Of a stretch of 64,000 bases of DNA, positions 1 through 18,400 are shown in pieces; position 1 is the stretch's first letter, and each line of letters begins with the position of its first letter. Under the pieces are notes generated by a model. That model did no database searches, was not told where the DNA came from, and worked only from the letters and a program-made list of their open reading frames with translations. Source of the stretch: Trichoplax adhaerens (Eukaryota > Animalia > Placozoa); contig NW_002060978.1 of NCBI RefSeq assembly GCF_000150275.1, positions 1-64,000 on the forward strand, written 5' to 3'. Made by a program: the position numbers and the translations under genes.

Positions 1-166
1 CCTAACCCTAACCCTAACCCTAACCCGAACCCTAACCCTAACCCTAACCCCTAACCCTAACCCTAACCCTAACCCTAACCCTAACCCTAACCCTAACCCT
101 AACCCTAACCCTAACCCTAACCCTAACCCTAACCCTAACCCTAACCCTAACCCTAACCCTAACCCC
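1..166. repeat. Telomeric repeat array (CCCTAA)n = TTAGGG telomere; left chromosome end
   Basis: About 27 tandem CCCTAA units from base 1, C-rich strand on +, as expected at a left end. Single variants CCCGAA (24-29) and CCCCTAA (48-54). Abrupt switch to unique AT-rich sequence at ~167. Confidence 0.98.
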
Positions 167-1778
167 ATTTAGCACGGATTTCATATCTAATATCCATTAC
201 TGAAAAGGTATCTAAAAAATAATTGAGTGTATATCTAGAGAAATTAAGGATTGTATTACTAATTATCCGTTCGATATCGATTCAGGATTTAACCTTTATT
301 AACACCATTGATGATACCGATAATTCTAAATTAAGTAACTGTAATTACAATTTTAGCTGTTTAATGCTCCTTAATTAAAAAATGATATTAAAGATTTTAT
401 CATTCATAAAAAATGAGTAGTTTGGATACATCTGTAAATCGAATGCAGAAGGTAGTCTCTACAAATTAGATGTCATTTAACCCTAACCATAAACGGCAAT
501 ACAAGTAGATACAACAGTGAATTAGATTCTCAATAGGGATTATATTGTTTTCTACGATTATTATTTTATCACTGATCATATTTATTGTGGTATATTTCAT
601 AAAGTAAATGTGGATTTTGATCTAAAGTAGTCATATGCTTAATGAAATGAATACAAATCTATACTTGGATTGTTTCTCAATTAAACTTTTGTATTTATGA
701 AACTGATACAACATACGTATCTTACTATAATATTAAGTAATGAAATGATATCGGTACTGAGCCAATGTTATTGTTTAACATAATTTTCTCTGTTTATGGG
801 TATGTAATGATATTACATATAGATGTCGATTAAATCCAAGATTGTCTAGTGCTAATATAAATGAACCGGAAAAAAAATGAAATAATCACCACAACATCGG
901 CCAACGGTTCTACGATGATATGAGGTTCTGCAAATTAGCAGCTAGCTGCTATATCATTAAGTTAGATTATGGCACAGATTTTTTTTGAAGTATTAGTTCC
1001 ATCTTGAAAGTTCTTTATGAACATACGAACAAAGTCTGCAGTCTTCAACAGATCTGAAACTAGAATCGCCATCTTGAATAGCTTGCGTAAGTCTTACATT
1101 TTTATGAGCGCAAAATAGTAAGTACTGATGAAGGTCAAGGACCAATTTTAATTATAGAGATTTGCTTAATCTGTTCTGGCGCCTCATAAATTATCTGTCG
1201 ATTCTTATTTATTCAGCAAATTAATACACTGCAGATATACGATGTAAGTAACATTACAAATTTTCTGATGCCCAACACTATCTTAATTCTAAAAACAAAA
1301 TTTTATTAGCAACTTTATACGATCTTAGATAATTAGCAAACATAGTTAAAAACAACTTATGAAACGTTTATCATGCTCAGATAGCAATCATCGTATTTAT
1401 TCCTGAATGCCCTCAAATTTGTTACTGATCTACTGCTGATATAATCTAAAAGTACGCACAGTTTCTGTTACTTATGCTCAATGAAGCATGAGTCAAGTCG
1501 TTTAGACCCTTAAATATTCAACTAAGTCAAAATTTTAGGATAAAAGACAAGTCGAAAATTAGTTTTATGAAATTACTACCAATTACAGCTAGAATACAGT
1601 TAGCTAAGTGTCAAAGTCCGATTAGGTCTCCTGTCTTTAAAATCTAAATTTCTGATACCTTCTGCAATTATATAAAGTCATAGTAAAAATTATGAAAGAT
1701 TGTTACGAAAAACTGCAACTTTGAAAACATTCCATGCGACGCTTTCCGTCCATCAGGATCTCGCTAGATCCAAAAAAT

Positions 1779-4700
1779 TTATTTCTTGTCACCCTTCGCT
1801 TTTAGTTTCTCCATTTCTACATAATAAGGGATCCTCACTGAATAATCAATTTAAGATCATAAAGAAACGGTATTGGACGATTACCTTGCTGAAGCTTTTG
1901 ATTCTCTTGCGCTAATTCAGAGTTTCTGGATGACAAATAAATAGCATCTTGTATTGATTCTTCAAGAAGTGATCTATAGGATTGGTCCATGGTGGCTTTT
2001 TGCTGTTCAAAAACGTCCCTGTAGTTTCGGAAGGTCTAACGTACAATTCAGAAGAAACCTTTAATATCATGGGTCTTAATATACGGGTATATTCTATGCA
2101 GAGAGAAGCAGTCCTACTTGAAATTGCTGAAGTTTTTGAATTTCGAATGCTTCCTTATGGCGTTTATAAACATTGTTGATATCGTCCTCCAATCTTGCCT
2201 TTTCCTGTTGCAATTTACTGATCTACAAATTTGTCAACAGTAATTTACGAGTAAGTTAGTTTAAGAATCAATGATAAGACATGTACTATAAAACAATACA
2301 TACCTTTAATGTGAGTATTGATCGTTCAGCCTTCATTTCTATTAGATCATTCTCTAGCTTTAGTATTTGTTGTTGCGAGTACTCGATTCCTTCTGCCATT
2401 TTTAACTACAGTCAGAGTATAAATAGCTATTAGATTTACACGTGATGTTAGTTTTTGCCCAAACATGACAGTTTTACCTGTACTTCAGCTTTTTCCTGCT
2501 GAATTTCAACTTTCATTCTTTCTAATTCTTCTTCAATTATTGCATCATCTTCCTTTTCTCGCTTTTTTCTTTCCTCTGCCTAGTATTTGTATTGTTTAAC
2601 TCATGTTATAAAGTAAGTAGACAATGAAACTGTTACTGCTGTACCTCTATGACTTGCTGTATTTCTAAATTGCCGCGGGAAGCACTGTATTGCATTTTAG
2701 CATCCTTAAGTATAAATTATTAGTTTATTAATAACACTAACAGTTGACAGATTATTAAACTATATGGCTACCATTTTTCCTTTTTTCATTTTCTCTTGAT
2801 TTTCTCTTAACCTTTTCTTGACATCTTTCAGGATTTCATTTTCGTGCTTCAATTTCTCTTTAACTTCATTAATTGCATTAACATATTGTTTGGTTTCTTC
2901 TTCTGATCGTTTATCTGAGTAGATTCATTAATATGAATTACATTAAATGGATTTAAAACATCAAGCATTTTCATATATAATAGGTTTGGATTAATAAAAC
3001 AGAAACTGTACTTGATTCTCCAAGCTTTGAATATTCAGATATTCGATTTTGCAAGTCGTCTTTCATTTCATCGACAACACGCCTCTTTTCTTTGTATTCC
3101 AGAGAGAGCTATGCGTAGATTTATAGCAGATTAGTTAATTCAGTTCAATTTAATATTTCTTATTAGATTTTCTTGACGTATAACAAATAATCTTACTGAG
3201 TCCTTTTCTTGCTGCAAGGTAACCAATTTTTCTTTTACTTCTCGGGTATCTTTCTTGTGGATATCAAAAACCCATTCTATCATACCCTATTGGCGATACA
3301 ATTGTTGTAATTTCAACATAAAACTATCATCAACATTGACTTAATCAAAATATTTGATTATTCGAACTGAAAATAACTTAATGTACCATTGCGCTTATGT
3401 ATACGTTACATAGCAGCTACCATCTCTAAATTTAACCACAGTACTCGTATACTAATATCACTTTTAGAGAAATGCTTTGATATCTCTAACCTTTTCAGCA
3501 AGATTGCGACGTCGTTCTTCTTCGTAAATATCAGAGTAGCGTTCCTTCTCGTACCAGGTTTGTCTCTTTGCAACATTAAGGTCTTTAATCATATCCTGTT
3601 TTAAAATTTTGTTGGCATTGTAGGAAAATTTACTAGGTGCAGATCAAATCAATCATTATAAGCTAAATTGACCTCTAGCCTCTGGATGTCTTCCTTATTT
3701 TGCACCGCTGCTTCTGGACTAGTTGAAGCAGTGGCTAATTTCTCTCTAAGTCTGTTTATCTCATCCCTAAGCTCTCTAATAACTCGCATATTGTCATCCT
3801 AGATGCATAAACAAAATTGGAACCCGTTAAAATGCGTTAATGCTATGCATGTCAAGAAAGACAAAGCCAATAAAAAAATCTGAATGTTTTCAACATTTTA
3901 AGCTTATAATATTAATAACCTCTGTTTGCTTAATAGTGTTCTTAATGCTTCGAATAGACTGAGTAAAGTCCAACGTATTTAGCGTTTCCTGATATTTTTC
4001 ACCTATAAATTGTTATTGGATTAACACTATGCTACATGATCCTACTTTTTGCTAAGTACCAACTTCGAAGCTATCTACTCGCAGCGAAATGCTATTTCAA
4101 GAGCCTTCTACCTGATGAAGAAACTGTTCCTATGAATACTGTACAGCTGTTACCGCCAAAAGCATCCTAATTGCACATTAGCGAGAAATAAGCAGAATAA
4201 TATAATCATATAACCATTCTTTAAAGAAAAGCATATACAATAGCAAATTGTAACCTGTAGTATTCGAGTGATTTTACTCTCTCTATATGGTATAACTGTT
4301 CGTTTCTTAGAATTTACGAGGTCTTGTACGACTTTATGAAGAGTGTTGACCCTAAATGAATGGTAGAGTTACTTAAGCATTTATATGTTCCCTAAATGAG
4401 AATGAATATCTAGGGGCTGACAAAATAAATAATGGTTACACTATATATTCTGGCAATTACTAGCTTTTGAATGCCATAGAAGGGATATTCATTTCATGAG
4501 CATTTGTCGAATACTTACCCTTTATTTGTCAGTTCATATCCTGATCCTTGACTATCCTTCTTCCGTGGTGGAGCTGCATACCATTTTTATTAAGTTATGA
4601 ATAATTGAATTTTTGAAAGCTTGAATAACAGTAACTAATTTTACCCAACCAATCTACATTACCAATAACCTCTAATTAATTTTCAGTGTACCTGTTATGC

Positions 4701-6275
4701 TGGCAATCACAATTTTGCTACGTAACCCGAGATCACCAGCATTTTCTTGTTGCTGTTCAATGGTTATGGTATATACATCGTCAGTTCTGCAATGATCGCA
4801 TTGTTAGCCAAGTAGTTTGAAATATACGAGTATGAGCAAAATTCTTAATAAACTTAAAGCAATCAATTAATTTTAATTAACCGTACTTTCTTGCTGCACC
4901 ACCACCTTTCTGGTCTTTCAACAGCTTTTTAACGCGACTACCTTGCTCATATAATTTCGTACAATCTTCGCTTGAGCGTACAACAATTTCAGAAAGACCA
5001 TCTATGTATCTGTGTAAAAGATATTAATGACGCTAATTTTACTTCAAATTCAAAAATAAAACTAAGTGTCGACAAAAAATATTTTAATAGTCTTCCTTAC
5101 AAGCCTAACTGCGGATGTTGTCTAATTTTCATTTCGTTTGAATGAGGATTTAGCAAATCTTGCATTTCTTCATCTCTAACCTATTCGATTTCTAACTGTT
5201 AGTTATATAAGTACAATATATAATTTTAAATCGAAATTAGCGTAGAAAGACCTCGAGAAATGAAGCAGTTGTAAGACAGCGTTTTCCAGATGATTGTAAT
5301 CCTTTGAAAATGGCCTGTGATAGCTGGAATGAATTATAATTATAACACACTTGAAACATAAATCTGGTGCAAAACATCGATAACAACTATGCATCTATAC
5401 ATTAATTAATTCAATAAAGTTGCTAAATTTAGATACTAGTAAGAAAGATCTTCCTACCAGAGGTACAATTCCAACTTGGTCTTCATTTCCTGACAAAGTA
5501 TGGGTTTTACCAGTACCAGCCTTAGCAAAGTAGTTAACGATATCTTTAGCACGATAGATAGTGTACTACAATTAAGAAATATTTACAAAGTACCTGTCCG
5601 TAAGTAACAATTGTTAAGTTCTTTCCAGATAGTGCTTTTTTAATTAGCGGCTCAACAGCATCATGGTATATGCTATCCTAATATTAATGAAACATTATTA
5701 GACGTTATATTTTTATTTCACATCCAAAATAACACCATTGCATAAATGACATCCAGTTTGCATACAGTTTTTGCGTCTGATGAGAAGCTGTAGTCGAAAG
5801 CAAAAGTTTGTTCCTGAAAGACAACAGCAGTAATAAAACGTTTTAGTAATAGTTAGGCAGGCGTTCATCTTTTACTATTTCGCATTAAATCAAAGTACTT
5901 AATATTTTCCTAAAGTTTTCATGAAATTTGATGCAATTACTGTTTACATGTACCTTGGTATCATTTCCAGAAGGATTAGGATTATGAATAATAACTTTTT
6001 CGTTGTGCATTTTAATGATTTTGGTTGCTCCTTGACCAGATTCAGAAGCTGTAATATCATTAACAGCATAGGCAAGTTCAGTTAGAGGAATAGAATTACA
6101 GAAAAACAAACAGAACAACATAAACCGATATTAAGCCTACCAGAGAAGGGACGACATCGGATAGAGGTTATTATATTCATAGATTCTTCCTAACAATGGT
6201 TAGATCCGCAAATTGCGATAAAAATATTGAAAGATACGAGATTAATTTACTGCGCTAATTATCCTAACTTGCCAT
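1779..6275 (-). CDS. Multi-exon kinesin-like protein (kinesin-3-type motor/neck, long coiled-coil tail) with degenerate switch I and II
   Basis: Hand-spliced exons give EESMNIITSIRCRPF (~6141-6190), EQTFAFDYSF, IVTYGQ|AGTGKTHTLSG..GIVP (P-loop, ~5594/5521), SFLE|VRDEEMQDLL..IRQHPQLGLYIDGLSE, IPYRESKITRILQ|DAFGGNSCTVFIGTVS, YQETLNTLDF, neck DDNMRVIRELRDEINRLREKL and KRQTWYEKE. Coiled-coil exons follow, ending EMEKLKAKGDKK* (TAA 1781-1779). Start is either ATG 6275 (ATG|GCAAGT GC-AG intron) or the internal Met near 6180. Confidence 0.9.
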
Positions 6276-7522
6276 TATTTAGTGATTGAAATGAAATCAG
6301 TAATGCTAAATCATAACACATAGTGATACAGTTGGCTTATAAAAGCATTTAAATTGACTATAAGCATAAACAATTATGAAGAGAATAACCTTGTTTGAAT
6401 AGATTAAACTGTATCTTGTTTTATAAAAGAGGAAGTACACGATATACTATATCTACTCCAATTGAACGAATAGATGAGTGAGTATGAACGTAATAAGTTA
6501 AGAAATTTTTAGCTTGTATAAAATCTCAATTTTAAGGAGCTAGATATTGCTATATCAACGGTGGAAATAAGAAACTGTGTTAAAATGATTTCACAGCGAA
6601 GTTTAGTTGCTTACATGCCGTATACACATGTACATGTCCAGTTAAATTAGTTATCATCGAGCATTCTATATCGAAATCGCATGCTTAGATAACATTTTTA
6701 CTGTTAACTTGCTAAAATCGCATGTATAAATTTACTACAACAATCCTCACTAATATAGACCGAAAATCTGTCACTTACGGTACAGAACATAATAACTAGC
6801 AGGAATAACAAACAGAAATATATCACCATTAAGTGTTAACCAATATTATAAATTCTTTGACATTTGAAGCAACATGTAGTAAGGGAATTATTCATACCAT
6901 GTTTGTGCCTCTGGTAATTTTCTTCCTGATTTGTGTATTTGTTATTCAAAAGTTCACCTTCGTGTCCCGTAGGCACTAGTTGCTAGTATTGATAGTCGAA
7001 GGTAGCAGTTATAACTACGGGATTAAACAAAATGCTTTACAGTAAATTGTGGTCAAAGCTTTTACAGATCGAAACTTTTCAATAAAATTGTGAATAACAG
7101 CGACTGGTCTCCAGTAGTAAAGCGATGTAAAGCTTGGACTTACACTTGGAAAGTGCATCTATTTTAAGTGATCTATCTCCAATTAATTAGCTATGGCACA
7201 GTACACAGGTGGATACCGTTGCGGTATATGGTACCGTACAGTATTTCTCTTGCAGTATAACAGCGATATTAAAAGTGACTGATGATCAACACAGTGCAAC
7301 TGGCTATTTCAGGGCCGTTACCAGCGCAACTGCATGATTAAAATAGCTAGCACTATGGTAATTAATAAAGACGGCATTAATGAAGGGAAAACTCCTTTTG
7401 CAGCAATAAGTACAAGAAAATTGCATACTGAAACATTTAGCTCGTTAGCTAGAAATAGCAGTACTGTATTGGTACTGTAGCATGTTATTTGAATTCTGTA
7501 AGATGCCCCGTCCTTTTCTCGT

Positions 7523-15400: not shown

Positions 15401-18400
15401 ACTTTAGTTACGTGTTGCTGACTGGAAATGATGATTTCATCTAAGGATTCACTACCTTATCTAAAATGTCTATTAAGTTATTGTAATTAACATTTAACGT
15501 CGATCGAAAATTATCCTTGGTTAACTTTCCTAACTTAGCTTATACACGGATAATTAAGTGTTCGTCTATGTTCCGATAAATTACGTTTATCTATCTTATC
15601 TTAAGTAAAAGTCATGAAGATCTTTTAAGGCGGATAGCCAGCGATAGGTAAGTTGTGGTTTCTGCTGATTCTATGCTGCTTATAATGTAATATAAGTCAA
15701 TACATTAAAGGTACACGTTATTAAATGTAGAGAGTCTGGTATAACAAGTGCTACCGATCAGTCACTTTTCGAAACTTTAAGAGAGCCAATCTATTCTGAA
15801 GTAGCTGCATTAATATCTCAAAATGAGGACAGGCCTCACTTTTTGGTAATACTTACAATATAATAGCTTCACTGTACTGTGTTGTCGTGATAATGTAATT
15901 ACGAATGTAAAGAAGTTTTATTGTACGCATTTGCTACAGCATCGTTTATATATTTTCGTTAGATTGAACTATTCCGAGAACTACAACAGTTAACAACGGA
16001 TTATTTACGTCAGCGAGCGATATTTTCGTTACAAGACCTTACTAGGCGTTATTTGCGGGAAGATACCATAGCTACAAGAGAGCCACAGCGCAATCAACGG
16101 GTACGCTTTCTAATTAATTTATACTCCCAAGGGGCTCTTTAAGAGATCGATATCGCTTTCCAGTACTGTTGTAGACATGATGTAGGAATAATCAAGATTT
16201 ATTCTATTATTACTAAGCCTTGGGCGTTATCAAATGCTACTTCCGAGCATACACCAAGTGAAAGTATTGCTACCATTGATGATGAAGAAATGCAGGTAAC
16301 GCATTGGTGTTAGTTTATACTTCTGTAGACGTTTGTGTTGTTTAATTAAAATCTATCTTATTGCTGTAAATATTCACCTATTTCGTAAATGATTGCATTA
16401 GGCTCAACTAGGAGGGCGCCGTAGCAATCGAAGACATACTCAAGACGACGATATTAGCTGTTTGAGCTACGATTACATGGAAGTGGTTGATTCGGCTACA
16501 TCTATGGCCACTCCACCGTCCAACTCTAGCCCGTACGATTTACCTTTTGCTTCAGACTCTTTAGGAGATACAATTATCCACTTAGATAAGGTGATATGCG
16601 TAATTTACGAGCAGTTTTAATCATTTATTAAGATTGTACACGCTTAGTATGTAATTTCTACTAAGCTAATAATTCATTTATTATGATCCATTTGTTTAAC
16701 TATACAGGCACTTAAAGAAGTTAGAGCCGTTGATGAAAGGGCACGACGTGGTACATTCACGATAGGTAATTCTGCAGTGGGTTTCTTACGTTAATTTATA
16801 CTAGTCATCTACCATCTCGAGACTGCTTAATGGCGAAAATAATTCATGTTCAGAGCGTCTATGAATATTTGGAAATAAACTATCTTTTCAGAAACGGAAA
16901 TGGCCAAGGAAGGAGTTGATAAGATTTCGAAAGCAAGTAGTATTGAAAGTCATAAAAGGAAGGGCGATGCAACTTTAAGTAATAATAGCTCCGCTTATGA
17001 TGTTGAAAGTAGTTCATCGTTGAGCGATGTTCCTTACCCTCGCGTTAATACTCAAGAACTGGACCGACGAATACATGTGATTCTAAAGGTATAGATTTAT
17101 TTTGGCTTATTTTAGAACTAAGGAAATTAACCACGAAATTTTGTTACCAGGAACTGGTACCCTACATAAAGGAACACTCGCAGGAATCTTGTTCTTCGCC
17201 TATGTTAAGTGCTATTTGTGCTCGTGTTCTGTCGTTAGCACAGAATCAAACCGAAAATGAGGAGTTTGCAAGATTCTTTCATCGTCAGTTGAACTCAACA
17301 TTGATAGACTCGCTTGGAAAATATATTGGAAGAAGGTGATTGCGCAATTTTAAAGTTGTTATCAAGACTGTCAGTTAAAGATCTAGTGTGTATCGATGTT
17401 TTTATAATTTATTGATGTTATTCTTGTTATATGCTGCCAACTATCAAAGTATGAAGATCGTAGCACAGGAAATTCTAGTCGACATTTCAGAGATTCTATT
17501 TAATGAGCTAGCATTCTTTGAACTTATGCAAGATGTCGATAGGTAACGATTCTAAACCAAAGTAGCTAAGCTTTCACAATGGTATATCTGTAATAGTTAT
17601 AATGTGAATATTTATGCTAGCCACGAAAAATCAAGCCAAGAAATACCATCCTATTTACCCAGCGGTAGTGGTAATCAACAATATACAAGTGAAGGTAGCA
17701 AGATTTGCTGTGCTATGATGCAGTAATTTTAGACAAATTCCATCAGTTTGTCCTTGTCGTTTTTAAGTCTTTTTGGTGTCCATAATATTATCGTACTTTT
17801 ATATTTCTCACGCAGACGGGAATGATAATTCAGAAATTGACTCTGAAACTGAAGCGGAAAGCGCTGAAGATAAGCCAGTTGATTCCGTTCATGAACGAGA
17901 GGTAAAAACCGCAGTTGATATGCTATCGAAAGATAAGAGTGATCAATCTATGGACGTTGAAATGGAAGAATTAGGCAAAGTATGTACGATTAGATTCATT
18001 CTATGAAAGACATTGTTACATACAGAGTTTGTATCATTACCATTTTATCAAGCCTAACCTGAAACTGTAGCATTAATTTGATTCGTCTTCAAATAACTTC
18101 ATTTTTAACGGTAGGATCGCGACGATGCTATGGCAAATCAGTTTGAAGAGCGGTCAATTGAGCTGATGCAGGAAACGGAATTTATTGATTGTACTGGCGA
18201 TTCTGCGTAAGTATTTTCTATTGCTTTTAGTAGTCGGCTCAGGATTATTGCATTTGGCTTGTTAGCAATGATTAATTTCTGGCGTTACAGTCAAACGGAA
18301 GATTTTAATAAAATTAGTACTGGAAATAACTTGGATGGCAAACAACACTCGACGGAAGGCAACTCCACTATTAGCAATGAAACTATTACCGACGACAACG

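What the first reader, a model, noticed from the sequence alone, without database searches (positions are those of the whole stretch)
3670..6190. Kinesin-3-derived pseudo-motor: P-loop kept, switch I and switch II both lost
Seen: the P-loop is GQAGTGKT. Where NxxSSRSH (switch I) should be, splicing 4887 to 4786 gives GGAARK|TDDVYTITIEQ. Where DLAGSE (switch II) should be, splicing 4692 to 4573 gives SKIVIASIT|APPR. EIYNE is EVRDE. The microtubule-binding L12/alpha5 motif PYRESKITRILQDAFGGNS is intact, the frame is open and splice sites are canonical, so this is not a decayed pseudogene. IRQHP.LG.YIDGLS, the neck NMRVIRELRDEINRLREKL and QTWYEK point to kinesin-3 ancestry, yet I see no FHA domain, only coiled coil. 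Established: the switch I Ser/Arg and switch II Gly/Glu are required for ATP hydrolysis and mechanochemical coupling; non-motile kinesin-fold proteins exist (kinesin-11/KIF26/VAB-8, Vik1). Inference: a nucleotide-binding, non-hydrolysing microtubule tether or heterodimer partner, apparently of separate origin from kinesin-11.
Basis: partly seen in the sequence, partly recalled or inferred. Interest (0 to 1): 0.85.

Follow-up and report, generated by a model that had tools for sequence, protein, structure and literature searches.

The report
Catalytically dead kinesin of an old family
This Trichoplax gene is expressed and encodes a kinesin whose ATP-splitting site is gone. It belongs to an old, unnamed kinesin family that still looks like a working motor in sponges and protists but lost its catalytic motifs in every cnidarian, placozoan and bilaterian member sampled.

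Summary
A 24-exon, 702-codon gene on the minus strand (CDS 6180-1779), next to the telomere, encodes a kinesin head, a neck coil and a coiled-coil tail. The Walker A loop (GQAGTGKT) is kept. Switch I (NxxSSRSH) reads KGGGAARKTDD and switch II (DLAGSE) reads ASITAP. RNA contigs from two studies show both critical junctions (4887|4786 and 4692|4573). No frame of the locus encodes the missing motifs.

The gene is TRIADDRAFT_62201, which the 2010 kinesin census set aside as "divergent". It is not a Trichoplax oddity:
- It is the only Trichoplax member of a roughly 700-aa family found in protists, a nucleariid, sponges, cnidarians, amphioxus, echinoderms, hemichordates, molluscs, annelids, nemerteans and brachiopods.
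- I found no vertebrate, arthropod or nematode member.
- Protist and sponge members have canonical motifs. Every cnidarian, placozoan and bilaterian member examined lacks the switch I serines.
- Decay is confined to switch I, switch II, L11 and the start of alpha4. The microtubule-binding L8 and L12/alpha5, the neck coil and a C-terminal tail motif stay conserved.

My trees put the family as sister to kinesin-3; the published tree put it in kinesin-2. The most likely reading is a microtubule-binding scaffold that does not hydrolyse ATP. That function is inferred, not shown. I found no paper describing this family.

The parts
1779..6180 (-). Coding region of the pseudo-kinesin gene (TRIADDRAFT_62201): 24 exons, 702 codons, stop at 1781-1779
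   Evidence: Exon model from coordinates, all GT-AG, open frame. At least 15 junctions seen in RNA contigs. Exons hit the family profile in order. The existing database model P0001 is 100% identical over exon 8.
6898..6926 (-). 3' end of a 5' leader exon spliced to 6189 (donor GT 6897-6896, acceptor AG 6191-6190). It holds an in-frame ATG at 6900-6898 that would add four residues. Its 5' limit is unknown.
   Evidence: Loose end of one X6 RNA contig at 6190 matches 6926-6899 when read on the sequence. There is an in-frame stop at 6948-6946. Single contig only.
5503..5599 (-). Walker A / P-loop GQAGTGKT, split by intron 4 (codons 5599-5594 and 5520-5503)
   Evidence: GxxxxGK[ST] is kept in the bilaterian, hexacoral, Hydra and jellyfish members examined; octocorals and one unnamed sequence have lost it.
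5169..5254 (-). EVRDE in place of the kinesin EIYNE motif, across intron 6 (5254-5252 and 5180-5169)
   Evidence: Junction 5252|5180 seen in RNA contigs (listed as 5178|5250 with a shift of 2).
4777..4912 (-). Switch I position: QKGGGAAR (4912-4889), a split Lys codon, then TDD (4785-4777), across intron 8. Both Ser of SSR are absent; the Arg is kept by alignment.
   Evidence: Alignments. Junction 4887|4786 in X6 and X16.
4566..4710 (-). Switch II position: VIASIT (4710-4693), a split Ala codon, then PP (4571-4566), across intron 9. The Asp, Gly and Glu of DLAGSE are all replaced.
   Evidence: Alignments. Junction 4692|4573 in X6 and X16.
4146..4290 (-). L12/alpha5 microtubule-binding motif: PYRESKITRILQ (4290-4255) and DAFGGNS (4166-4146)
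   Evidence: Pfam Kinesin hit on exon 11 (E 2e-6). The region is conserved in the degenerate clade about as well as in canonical members.
3736..3792 (-). Neck coil NMRVIRELRDEINRLREKL (exon 14)
   Evidence: Weak, sub-threshold Kinesin_assoc hit (E 3e-4). Conservation 0.70 in the degenerate clade. Junctions on both sides seen in RNA.
1885..2035 (-). Exon 23: conserved C-terminal tail motif (FQTFRNYRDVFEQQK...LLEESIQDAIYLSSRNSEL)
   Evidence: Best family-profile hit of the gene in its own genome (E 3e-24). 67-69% identical to coral and acorn worm. Tail-only search finds only family kinesins.

Best explanation
The locus is a real, expressed Trichoplax gene for a protein of about 702 aa: a kinesin head, a neck coil, about 350 aa of coiled coil and a conserved C-terminal motif.

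It is the single Trichoplax member of an ancient, unnamed kinesin family that my trees place as sister to kinesin-3. Protist, nucleariid and sponge members have canonical catalytic motifs. The catalytic machinery was most likely lost in the common stem of cnidarians, placozoans and bilaterians. Trichoplax shows the most complete loss, with both switch I and switch II gone.

Shown here:
- gene structure and splicing;
- absence of the motifs;
- family membership;
- the pattern of what is lost (switch I, switch II, L11, start of alpha4) and what is kept (RxRP, P-loop, L8, L12/alpha5, neck coil, tail motif).

Inferred: the head can no longer hydrolyse ATP by the kinesin mechanism but still binds microtubules. 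The protein would then act as a static or nucleotide-locked microtubule anchor, probably as a homodimer through its neck coil, and would hold whatever its conserved C-terminal motif binds on microtubules.
For: - **Gene and expression.** 24 GT-AG exons with an open frame. Spliced contigs from two studies include both critical junctions. The shares of words held by the RNA-type runs (about 0.30) match my own count for a fully spliced mRNA.
- **No rescue exon.** No matching motif in any frame of the locus. The family profile hits only the modelled exons, and the genome holds no second gene with this tail.
- **Family.** 40-45% identity over 97% of the length to proteins of about 700 aa from many phyla (E 1e-160 to 1e-105). 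The profile search extends the family to cnidarians, sponges and protists. The tail-only search adds amphioxus, Nematostella, Hydra and a nucleariid, and finds nothing but family kinesins.
- **Motifs.** Canonical GQTGSGKT / NxxSSRSH / DLAGSE in sponges and protists. Switch I is degenerate in all cnidarian, placozoan and bilaterian members examined.
- **Tree.** Family monophyletic at 100/98. The degenerate members form one clade at 100/100, with sponges just outside it.
- **Where conservation falls.** It drops only at switch I, at switch II to the start of alpha4, and at the start of alpha6. L8, L12/alpha5, the P-loop and the neck coil hold.
- **Head versus tail.** The tail is as conserved as the head or more so among most pairs of degenerate members compared (Trichoplax-coral 44% head, 51% stalk, 67% C-terminal motif). 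This is the reverse of canonical pairs (sponge-sponge 71/55/51).
Against: - No biochemical or localisation data exist for any family member that I could find.
- Microtubule binding is inferred from motif conservation only.
- Bilaterian members deleted most of L11 and the start of alpha4, which are part of the microtubule interface. Octocorals lost the P-loop Ser/Thr. The head may therefore serve different ends in different lineages.
- dN/dS in the placozoan lineage could not be measured, because no second placozoan ortholog was available.
- RNA evidence comes from assembled contigs, which hide rare isoforms.
- A single loss in the stem is the parsimonious reading, not a proven one. The replaced sequences differ between bilaterians (RAHRAR[SA]H) and cnidarians/Trichoplax (GGAR-type).
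Confidence: 0.6

Rival explanations
1. Dead-head partner in a heterodimer. The protein pairs through its neck coil with a catalytically active kinesin and tunes that motor, as Vik1/Cik1 do for Kar3.
For: The neck linker and neck coil stay conserved although catalysis is lost. Non-catalytic kinesin-fold partners are known (PMC4338441, listed).
Against: Trichoplax has only one gene with this family's stalk and tail. Canonical sponge and protist members share the same stalk, with no sign of a second family subunit among the hits. Vik1 lacks a P-loop, whereas this protein keeps one. No candidate partner was identified.
Confidence: 0.15
2. The kinesin fold is repurposed for something other than microtubule binding, for example as a protein-binding or nucleotide-sensing module. 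The tail would carry the ancestral role.
For: The tail is more conserved than the head in most pairs of degenerate members. L11 and the start of alpha4, part of the tubulin interface, are degenerate or deleted.
Against: L8 and L12/alpha5, the other main tubulin contacts, are conserved about as strongly as in canonical members.
Confidence: 0.15
3. It is still an ATPase or motor that uses non-canonical residues.
For: The P-loop and the RxRP motif are kept, and the neck linker and neck coil are conserved. Ambulacrarian members keep DLAGSE and the switch I Arg.
Against: From established kinesin enzymology, which is my own knowledge: the switch I Ser that coordinates Mg2+ is absent, and the switch II Asp, Gly and Glu are all replaced in Trichoplax. 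Loss of any one of these cripples kinesin ATPase.
Confidence: 0.07
4. It is a transcribed gene relic on its way to becoming a pseudogene, in a fast-evolving subtelomeric position.
For: It is the first gene in from the telomere repeat. It has the longest terminal branch within the family's animal clade (sponges plus degenerate members): 0.78 against a median of 0.28 for all rows.
Against: 702 codons across 24 exons remain open with canonical splice sites. It shares 45% identity over the full length with deuterostome orthologs, and 67-69% in the C-terminal motif. The same degenerate state persists in many phyla.
Confidence: 0.03

Closest known systems
Kinesin-3 (KIF1A/UNC-104, KIF13, KIF14, KIF16B)
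   Same: Sister group in my maximum-likelihood trees (99/98; 97). The neck coil is of the IRELxxEIxRLR type and there are weak Kinesin_assoc matches. The sponge member scores almost as high against KIF1A structures as against any other kinesin.
   Different: No FHA domain and no long Lys-rich K-loop. The tail is a family-specific coiled coil. The catalytic motifs are lost in eumetazoan members. Placement with kinesin-2 is only borderline rejected.
Kinesin-2 (KIF3/KIF17/OSM-3), as assigned by Wickstead, Gull and Richards 2010 (PMC2867816)
   Same: The Lottia (Lotgi_235687) and Phytophthora sojae (Physo_158637) members are listed there as 'Kinesin-2' without a subfamily. The sea urchin entry GLEAN3_11353 is probably the family's member too. 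OSM-3 is the top solved-structure hit for the sponge member. Many NCBI automatic names are kinesin-2 names.
   Different: In my trees kinesin-2 is a separate clade (100/97) away from the family. The family has no kinesin-2 type tail. The Trichoplax gene itself was excluded from that study's tree as 'divergent'.
Kinesin-11 / KIF26A, KIF26B, VAB-8 (non-motile kinesins)
   Same: A kinesin head with a degenerate ATPase. For kinesin-11 this head is thought to bind microtubules without moving (my own knowledge).
   Different: Different family: KIF26 is group X7 in the 2010 tree, and the sea urchin has an X7 gene in addition. Different size and architecture (about 700 aa with a coiled-coil tail). The degeneration here arose inside a family that still has canonical members. 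I had no KIF26 sequence to put in my own tree.
Vik1/Cik1 (Kar3 partners) and Costal2/KIF7
   Same: Kinesin-fold proteins that no longer work as conventional motors and act as microtubule-binding partners or scaffolds (PMC4338441 and PMC12919046, listed).
   Different: Vik1 has no P-loop and sits C-terminal to its coiled coil. KIF7/Cos2 belong to kinesin-4. Neither is related to this family beyond the superfamily fold.

Membership tests
Kinesin superfamily (Pfam PF00225) | Motor-domain profile match over the curated cut-off | tested here: met
   The database model of this gene (P0001) scores 132.6 bits, E 2e-38, against a cut-off of 29.3. Single exons give sub-threshold matches in the right order.
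Kinesin superfamily, catalytically competent motor | P-loop GQTxxGK[ST], switch I NxxSSRSH and switch II DLAGSE | tested here: not met
   The P-loop is present (GQAGTGKT). Switch I reads KGGGAARKTDD and switch II reads ASITAP. No alternative exon exists.
Unnamed kinesin family of about 700 aa (Lotgi_235687 / Physo_158637 / TRIADDRAFT_62201 group) | Full-length collinear homology (head, neck coil, coiled coil, C-terminal motif) and monophyly | tested here: met
   97% coverage at 40-45% identity. Profile E-values run from about 1e-90 to below 1e-290, with kinesin-2 and kinesin-3 hits starting near 1e-90. The tail-only search returns only family members. Clade support 100/98.
Kinesin-3 | Motor-domain phylogeny places the protein inside or next to kinesin-3 | tested here: inconclusive
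   Sister to kinesin-3 at 99/98 and 97. The AU test of the kinesin-2 alternative gives p 0.077 and 0.033. My kinesin-3 sample lacks KIF13, KIF14 and KIF28.
Kinesin-3 | FHA domain after the neck | tested here: not met
   No FHA hit in P0001, in four orthologs or in the tail exons.
Kinesin-3 | Lys-rich K-loop insertion in L12 | tested here: not met
   L12 is short (SKKRT in Trichoplax, P.KKGG in orthologs), without the insertion seen in the KIF16B row.
Kinesin-2 | Motor-domain phylogeny inside kinesin-2 | tested here: inconclusive
   The published tree says kinesin-2, unassigned. My trees separate them, and the AU test is borderline.
Kinesin-11 (KIF26/VAB-8) | Orthology to KIF26A/B | not tested
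   No KIF26 sequence was available by reference. Indirect evidence only: the 2010 table puts KIF26 in X7, and the sea urchin has both an X7 gene and a probable member of this family.
Kinesin-17 (Wickstead) | Orthology to Physo_128334 / Chlre_175469 | tested here: not met
   The P. sojae kinesin-17 sequence printed in the paper's alignment differs throughout from the family's oomycete members. Physo_158637 matches them. The comparison was by eye.

The most novel reading that the evidence does not exclude
An ancient kinesin family whose protist and sponge members keep every canonical catalytic motif was converted once into a pseudo-motor. The conversion happened in the stem of cnidarians, placozoans and bilaterians. 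The catalytic loops were released from constraint, while the microtubule-binding face, the neck and a conserved tail motif were kept. The pseudo-motor has since been maintained across most marine invertebrate phyla, including amphioxus, and was lost in vertebrates and ecdysozoans. It would be a kinesin pseudo-enzyme family with an unknown, conserved cellular role, separate from kinesin-11.
Probability: 0.55. Interest if true: 0.75.

Novelty: new variant of a known kind. Interest (0 to 1): 0.62.

Why it matters
Few non-motile kinesins are known (KIF26/VAB-8, Cos2/KIF7, Vik1/Cik1), and each has taught something about how the kinesin fold is reused. Three things make this case useful:

- It is a natural series within one orthologous family: sequence-intact motors in protists and sponges, partly degenerate heads in bilaterians and cnidarians, and a fully switch-less head in Trichoplax. 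One could ask directly which parts of the head are needed once hydrolysis is given up, and what the conserved tail motif binds.
- It corrects the annotation of TRIADDRAFT_62201, and of dozens of orthologs that carry conflicting automatic names.
- It assigns a sequence discarded as "divergent" in the reference kinesin census to a defined family.

The family is absent from the standard model animals. That probably explains why it has gone unstudied.

Tried and rejected
- **Pfam on single exons** gave only weak kinesin hits. That was enough for order but not for classification.
- **The representative search** with exon 8 found the gene's own database model and a 77-aa fragment from a metagenome. 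The fragment's switch I stretch is identical to the coral's, so it is probably cnidarian.
- **Kinesin-17 identity** was considered and rejected by comparing sequences in the 2010 supplement.
- **Alternative exons** restoring the motifs: none.
- **A second, canonical paralog in Trichoplax:** none with this tail.
- **Tail function:** no Pfam domain. The ESM Atlas returned only coiled-coil look-alikes. The tail-only homology search found no non-kinesin carrier.
- **Ciliary link:**
  - An X-box-like palindrome at 7317-7330 has one mismatch, and the window holds 8 such matches against 3.1 expected. This is weak.
  - The neighbouring gene gives only a sub-threshold PCM1_C hit.
  - A nucleariid member (Nk52) argues against a strictly ciliary distribution. 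Its identification as Parvularia is from my own memory.
- **Origin of the unnamed sequences P0014 and P0179:** contig look-ups gave no organism. P0014 resembles Hydra in its motifs.
- **Literature:** searches by gene identifiers and by concept found no description.
  - The joined 702-aa model was assembled from coordinates only inside local scripts, for translation, alignment and trees. External searches used single exons by reference or the database proteins.
  - For the same reason I ran no structure prediction or complex prediction of the Trichoplax protein.
  - The telomere repeat at 1-170 was not sent to any tool.
  - dN/dS could not be computed.
Full report
**What is in the sequence**

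The window is AT-rich (about 33% G+C) and starts with a telomere repeat on the minus-strand reading. Earlier notes of this scan call the genome Trichoplax. I confirmed this: the database protein that is 100% identical over exon 8 is named TRIADDRAFT_62201 [Trichoplax adhaerens].

From coordinates alone I built a minus-strand model of 24 exons (CDS 6180 to 1779). Every intron is GT-AG and 65-204 bases long, and the frame is open for 702 codons.
- GQAGTGKT across intron 4;
- ...KGGGAAR | K TDDVYTITIEQ across the 4887/4786 junction;
- ...KIVIASIT | A PPRKK across the 4692/4573 junction;
- EVRDE for EIYNE;
- PYRESKITRILQ/DAFGGNS;
- the neck NMRVIRELRDEINRLREKL, QTWYEK, and the tail motif in exon 23.

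**Is the splicing real?**

The share of sampled words held by about ten runs, three of them RNA by their record, is about 0.30. By my own count that is what a fully spliced mRNA of this model would hold.

I laid contigs of four runs on 1700-6300. Run X6 is an RNA-seq library by its record. Run X16 is RNA by the tool's guess and comes from another study. Both carry the joints 4786|4887 and 4573|4692, and 13 further joints of the model are listed, all with CT..AC ends on the plus strand. Nine more joints were not printed. Run X4 gave unspliced, DNA-like pieces, and X12 gave nothing. Contigs cannot exclude rare isoforms.

No frame on either strand between 1700 and 6600 encodes anything like SSRSH or DLAGSE, and introns 8-10 are full of stops. 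A profile of the family hits only the modelled exons, in order.

One X6 contig continues past 6190 with letters that I located at 6926-6899. This implies a 5' leader exon ending at 6898, spliced to 6189. It also implies an in-frame upstream ATG (6900-6898) that would add four residues. It rests on a single contig.

**What it is**

The existing gene model P0001 (647 aa) lacks my exons 1, 3, 6 and 7 and has a different C-terminus. The missing pieces align to orthologs.

Searching with P0001 gave a sharp group of proteins of about 700 aa, 40-45% identical over 97% of the length (E 1e-160 to 1e-105). They come from hemichordates, echinoderms, molluscs, a brachiopod and an annelid. There is then a gap down to E 1e-30. 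Their automatic names contradict each other (klp-20, KIF4, KIF1B, OSM-3, KIF3B, KIF13A, FLA10), which is typical of a family without a name.

Two further searches widened the family:
- A profile of 14 members added nemerteans, corals, an anemone, three sponges, oomycetes, Tribonema, a sequence filed under Symbiodinium, relatives of brown algae and several unnamed transcripts.
- A search with the tail alone (residues 345-712 of the acorn-worm protein) added amphioxus, Nematostella, Acropora, Hydra, a jellyfish, octocorals and two unicellular opisthokont-type entries (Nk52 and m.125031). It returned nothing except kinesin-domain proteins of this family.

No vertebrate, tunicate, arthropod or nematode protein appeared in any list. 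Trichoplax has a single copy: only this locus matches the stalk and tail part of the profile.

**The main result: where the catalytic site was lost**

The motif tables show a clean split.

| Group | P-loop | Switch I | Switch II |
|---|---|---|---|
| Protists, Nk52, m.125031, three sponges | GQTGSGK[ST] | NxxSSRSH | DLAGSE, followed by the usual L11/alpha4 start |
| Bilaterians generally | GxxxxGK[ST] | RAHRAR[SA]H | DLAGSE in ambulacrarians; variants such as DLAGTD, DLAGCE or DVAGSS in lophotrochozoans; most of L11 and the alpha4 start deleted |
| Amphioxus | GxxxxGK[ST] | its own variant | DLAGAE |
| Anthozoans | kept in hexacorals | GGAR- or KASR-type | DMAGS[ED] (corals), DLSGTE (Nematostella) |
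| Medusozoans | kept | further variants | ELAGSE, DLAGSN |
| Octocorals | Ser/Thr lost (GQKYSGKE) | degenerate | NLADSD |
| Trichoplax | kept (GQAGTGKT) | KGGGAARKTDD (Arg kept by alignment) | ASITAP (Asp, Gly and Glu all replaced) |

Every cnidarian, Trichoplax and every bilaterian member examined lacks both switch I serines.

In the careful maximum-likelihood tree of 69 motor domains (LG+C20 PMSF):
- the family is one clade (100/98);
- the degenerate members form one clade (100/100);
- the sponges branch just outside that clade.

One loss in the common stem is therefore the simplest reading. The differing replacement sequences allow later independent drift, or even parallel loss.

**What decayed and what was kept**

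I scanned conservation position by position in 19 degenerate and 16 canonical members.

Conservation drops sharply only at three places:
- switch I (0.35 against 0.77);
- the stretch from switch II through L11 to the first half of alpha4 (0.49, 0.10, 0.01 and 0.34 against 0.89, 0.73, 0.70 and 0.76);
- the start of alpha6.

These features hold up:
- the RxRP motif;
- the P-loop (0.62 against 0.80);
- L8 (0.70 against 0.66);
- L12/alpha5 (0.61-0.73 against 0.72-0.79);
- the neck coil (0.70 against 0.60).

Pairwise identities show the usual order reversed. Canonical pairs have a better-conserved head than tail (sponge-sponge 71% head, 55% stalk, 51% C-terminal motif). In most degenerate pairs the head is the least conserved part (Trichoplax-coral 44%, 51%, 67%; Trichoplax-acorn worm 43%, 52%, 69%). 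Trichoplax has the longest terminal branch within the family's animal clade (sponges plus degenerate members): 0.78 against a median of 0.28 for all rows.

**Which kinesin family?**

Wickstead, Gull and Richards 2010 (PMC2867816) removed the Trichoplax protein from their tree as "ND, divergent", with a Pfam score of 27. They list the Lottia ortholog (Lotgi_235687) as "Kinesin-2" without a subfamily. The P. sojae member is listed the same way; I identified it by its printed sequence as Physo_158637. A sea urchin entry with the same label is probably the ortholog. Their kinesin-17 of P. sojae is a different sequence. KIF26A/B fall in their group X7, which the sea urchin also has.

My trees instead put the family as sister to kinesin-3 (99/98), away from a well-supported kinesin-2 clade. 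The result is the same when only canonical members and the motor core without the neck are used (97).

Forcing the family together with kinesin-2 costs 27.2 log-likelihood units (AU p 0.077). With canonical members only it costs 19.7 units (p 0.033). Kinesin-3 affinity is therefore favoured but borderline.

Limits of my sample: there is no KIF13, KIF14, KIF28, KIF17, kinesin-11 or kinesin-17 sequence. The sponge member scores about equally against OSM-3 and KIF1A structures. The family lacks the FHA domain and the K-loop, and only the neck resembles kinesin-3. I treat it as a separate, unnamed family next to kinesin-3.

**How it most likely works**

What follows from established kinesin enzymology is my own knowledge. 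The switch I Ser coordinates Mg2+, and the Arg-Glu bridge closes the pocket. The switch II Asp, Gly and Glu sense the gamma-phosphate and position the attacking water. With these gone, the Trichoplax head cannot hydrolyse ATP in the kinesin way.

What the sequences show is that the tubulin-facing L8 and L12/alpha5, the neck coil, the stalk and a C-terminal motif remain under constraint.

The inference is a microtubule-binding scaffold that does not hydrolyse ATP. It is probably a homodimer, given one gene per genome here and a conserved neck coil. It would hold a conserved but unknown partner of the tail motif on microtubules. Whether nucleotide is still bound is open: the P-loop is kept in most lineages but not in octocorals.

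The rivals are set out in their own section: a heterodimer partner, a head repurposed away from microtubules, a residual non-canonical ATPase, and a dying gene.

**Novelty and limits**

I found no paper that describes this family or its loss of catalytic motifs. The scan's index holds this same stretch once more, read in another window or again, and a note on the promoter it shares with the neighbouring gene; I found no follow-up report on either.

It was assembled from coordinates only inside local scripts, for translation, alignment and trees. I made no structure or complex prediction, and dN/dS could not be computed. The telomere repeat was not sent to any tool.

Noticed in passing
window 1-170: The window begins with a telomere repeat array (TTAGGG units when read on the minus strand). 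The pseudo-kinesin is the first gene in from the chromosome end; its stop codon lies about 1.6 kb from the repeats.
   Followed up: no
window 1779-6180, against database protein P0001: The public gene model TRIADDRAFT_62201 (647 aa) is wrong in places. It lacks exons 1, 3, 6 and 7 of the RNA-supported model. It reads 15 residues from intron sequence after the P-loop exon. It also ends in a 3' read-through instead of exon 24.
   Followed up: yes
window 6898-6926 and 6189-6191: One RNA contig joins a 5' leader exon (ending at 6898) to 6189 across an intron of about 707 bases. An ATG at 6900-6898 is in frame with the main start and is preceded by a stop at 6948-6946. The true start may therefore lie four codons upstream.
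   Followed up: partly
window 7317-7330: A palindromic X-box-like site, GTTACCAGCGCAAC, with one mismatch to GTNRCCNNRGYAAC. It lies about 390 bases beyond the known 5' end of the gene, between it and the plus-strand neighbour. The window holds 8 such matches against 3.1 expected, so the evidence is weak.
   Followed up: partly
window 16900-17091 (+): An open frame of the plus-strand neighbour gives a sub-threshold match to PCM1_C (PF15717, E 8e-4, 18.7 bits against a cut-off of 27.4). The other eight frames tested gave nothing useful.
   Followed up: partly
L001 (ENA metagenome contig, 882 bases), gene 638-871: A 77-aa predicted fragment ends in ...KLASADKNSGGAR, the same letters as the coral Pocillopora at its degenerate switch I. 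It stops where Trichoplax exon 8 ends, which suggests a shared intron position between cnidarians and placozoans.
   Followed up: no
proteins P0237, P0244, P0242 (octocorals and an unnamed relative): In octocoral members of the family even the Walker A Ser/Thr is replaced (GQKYSGKE, GQKSTGKD) and switch II reads NLADSD. This is a further step of decay than in Trichoplax at the P-loop.
   Followed up: no
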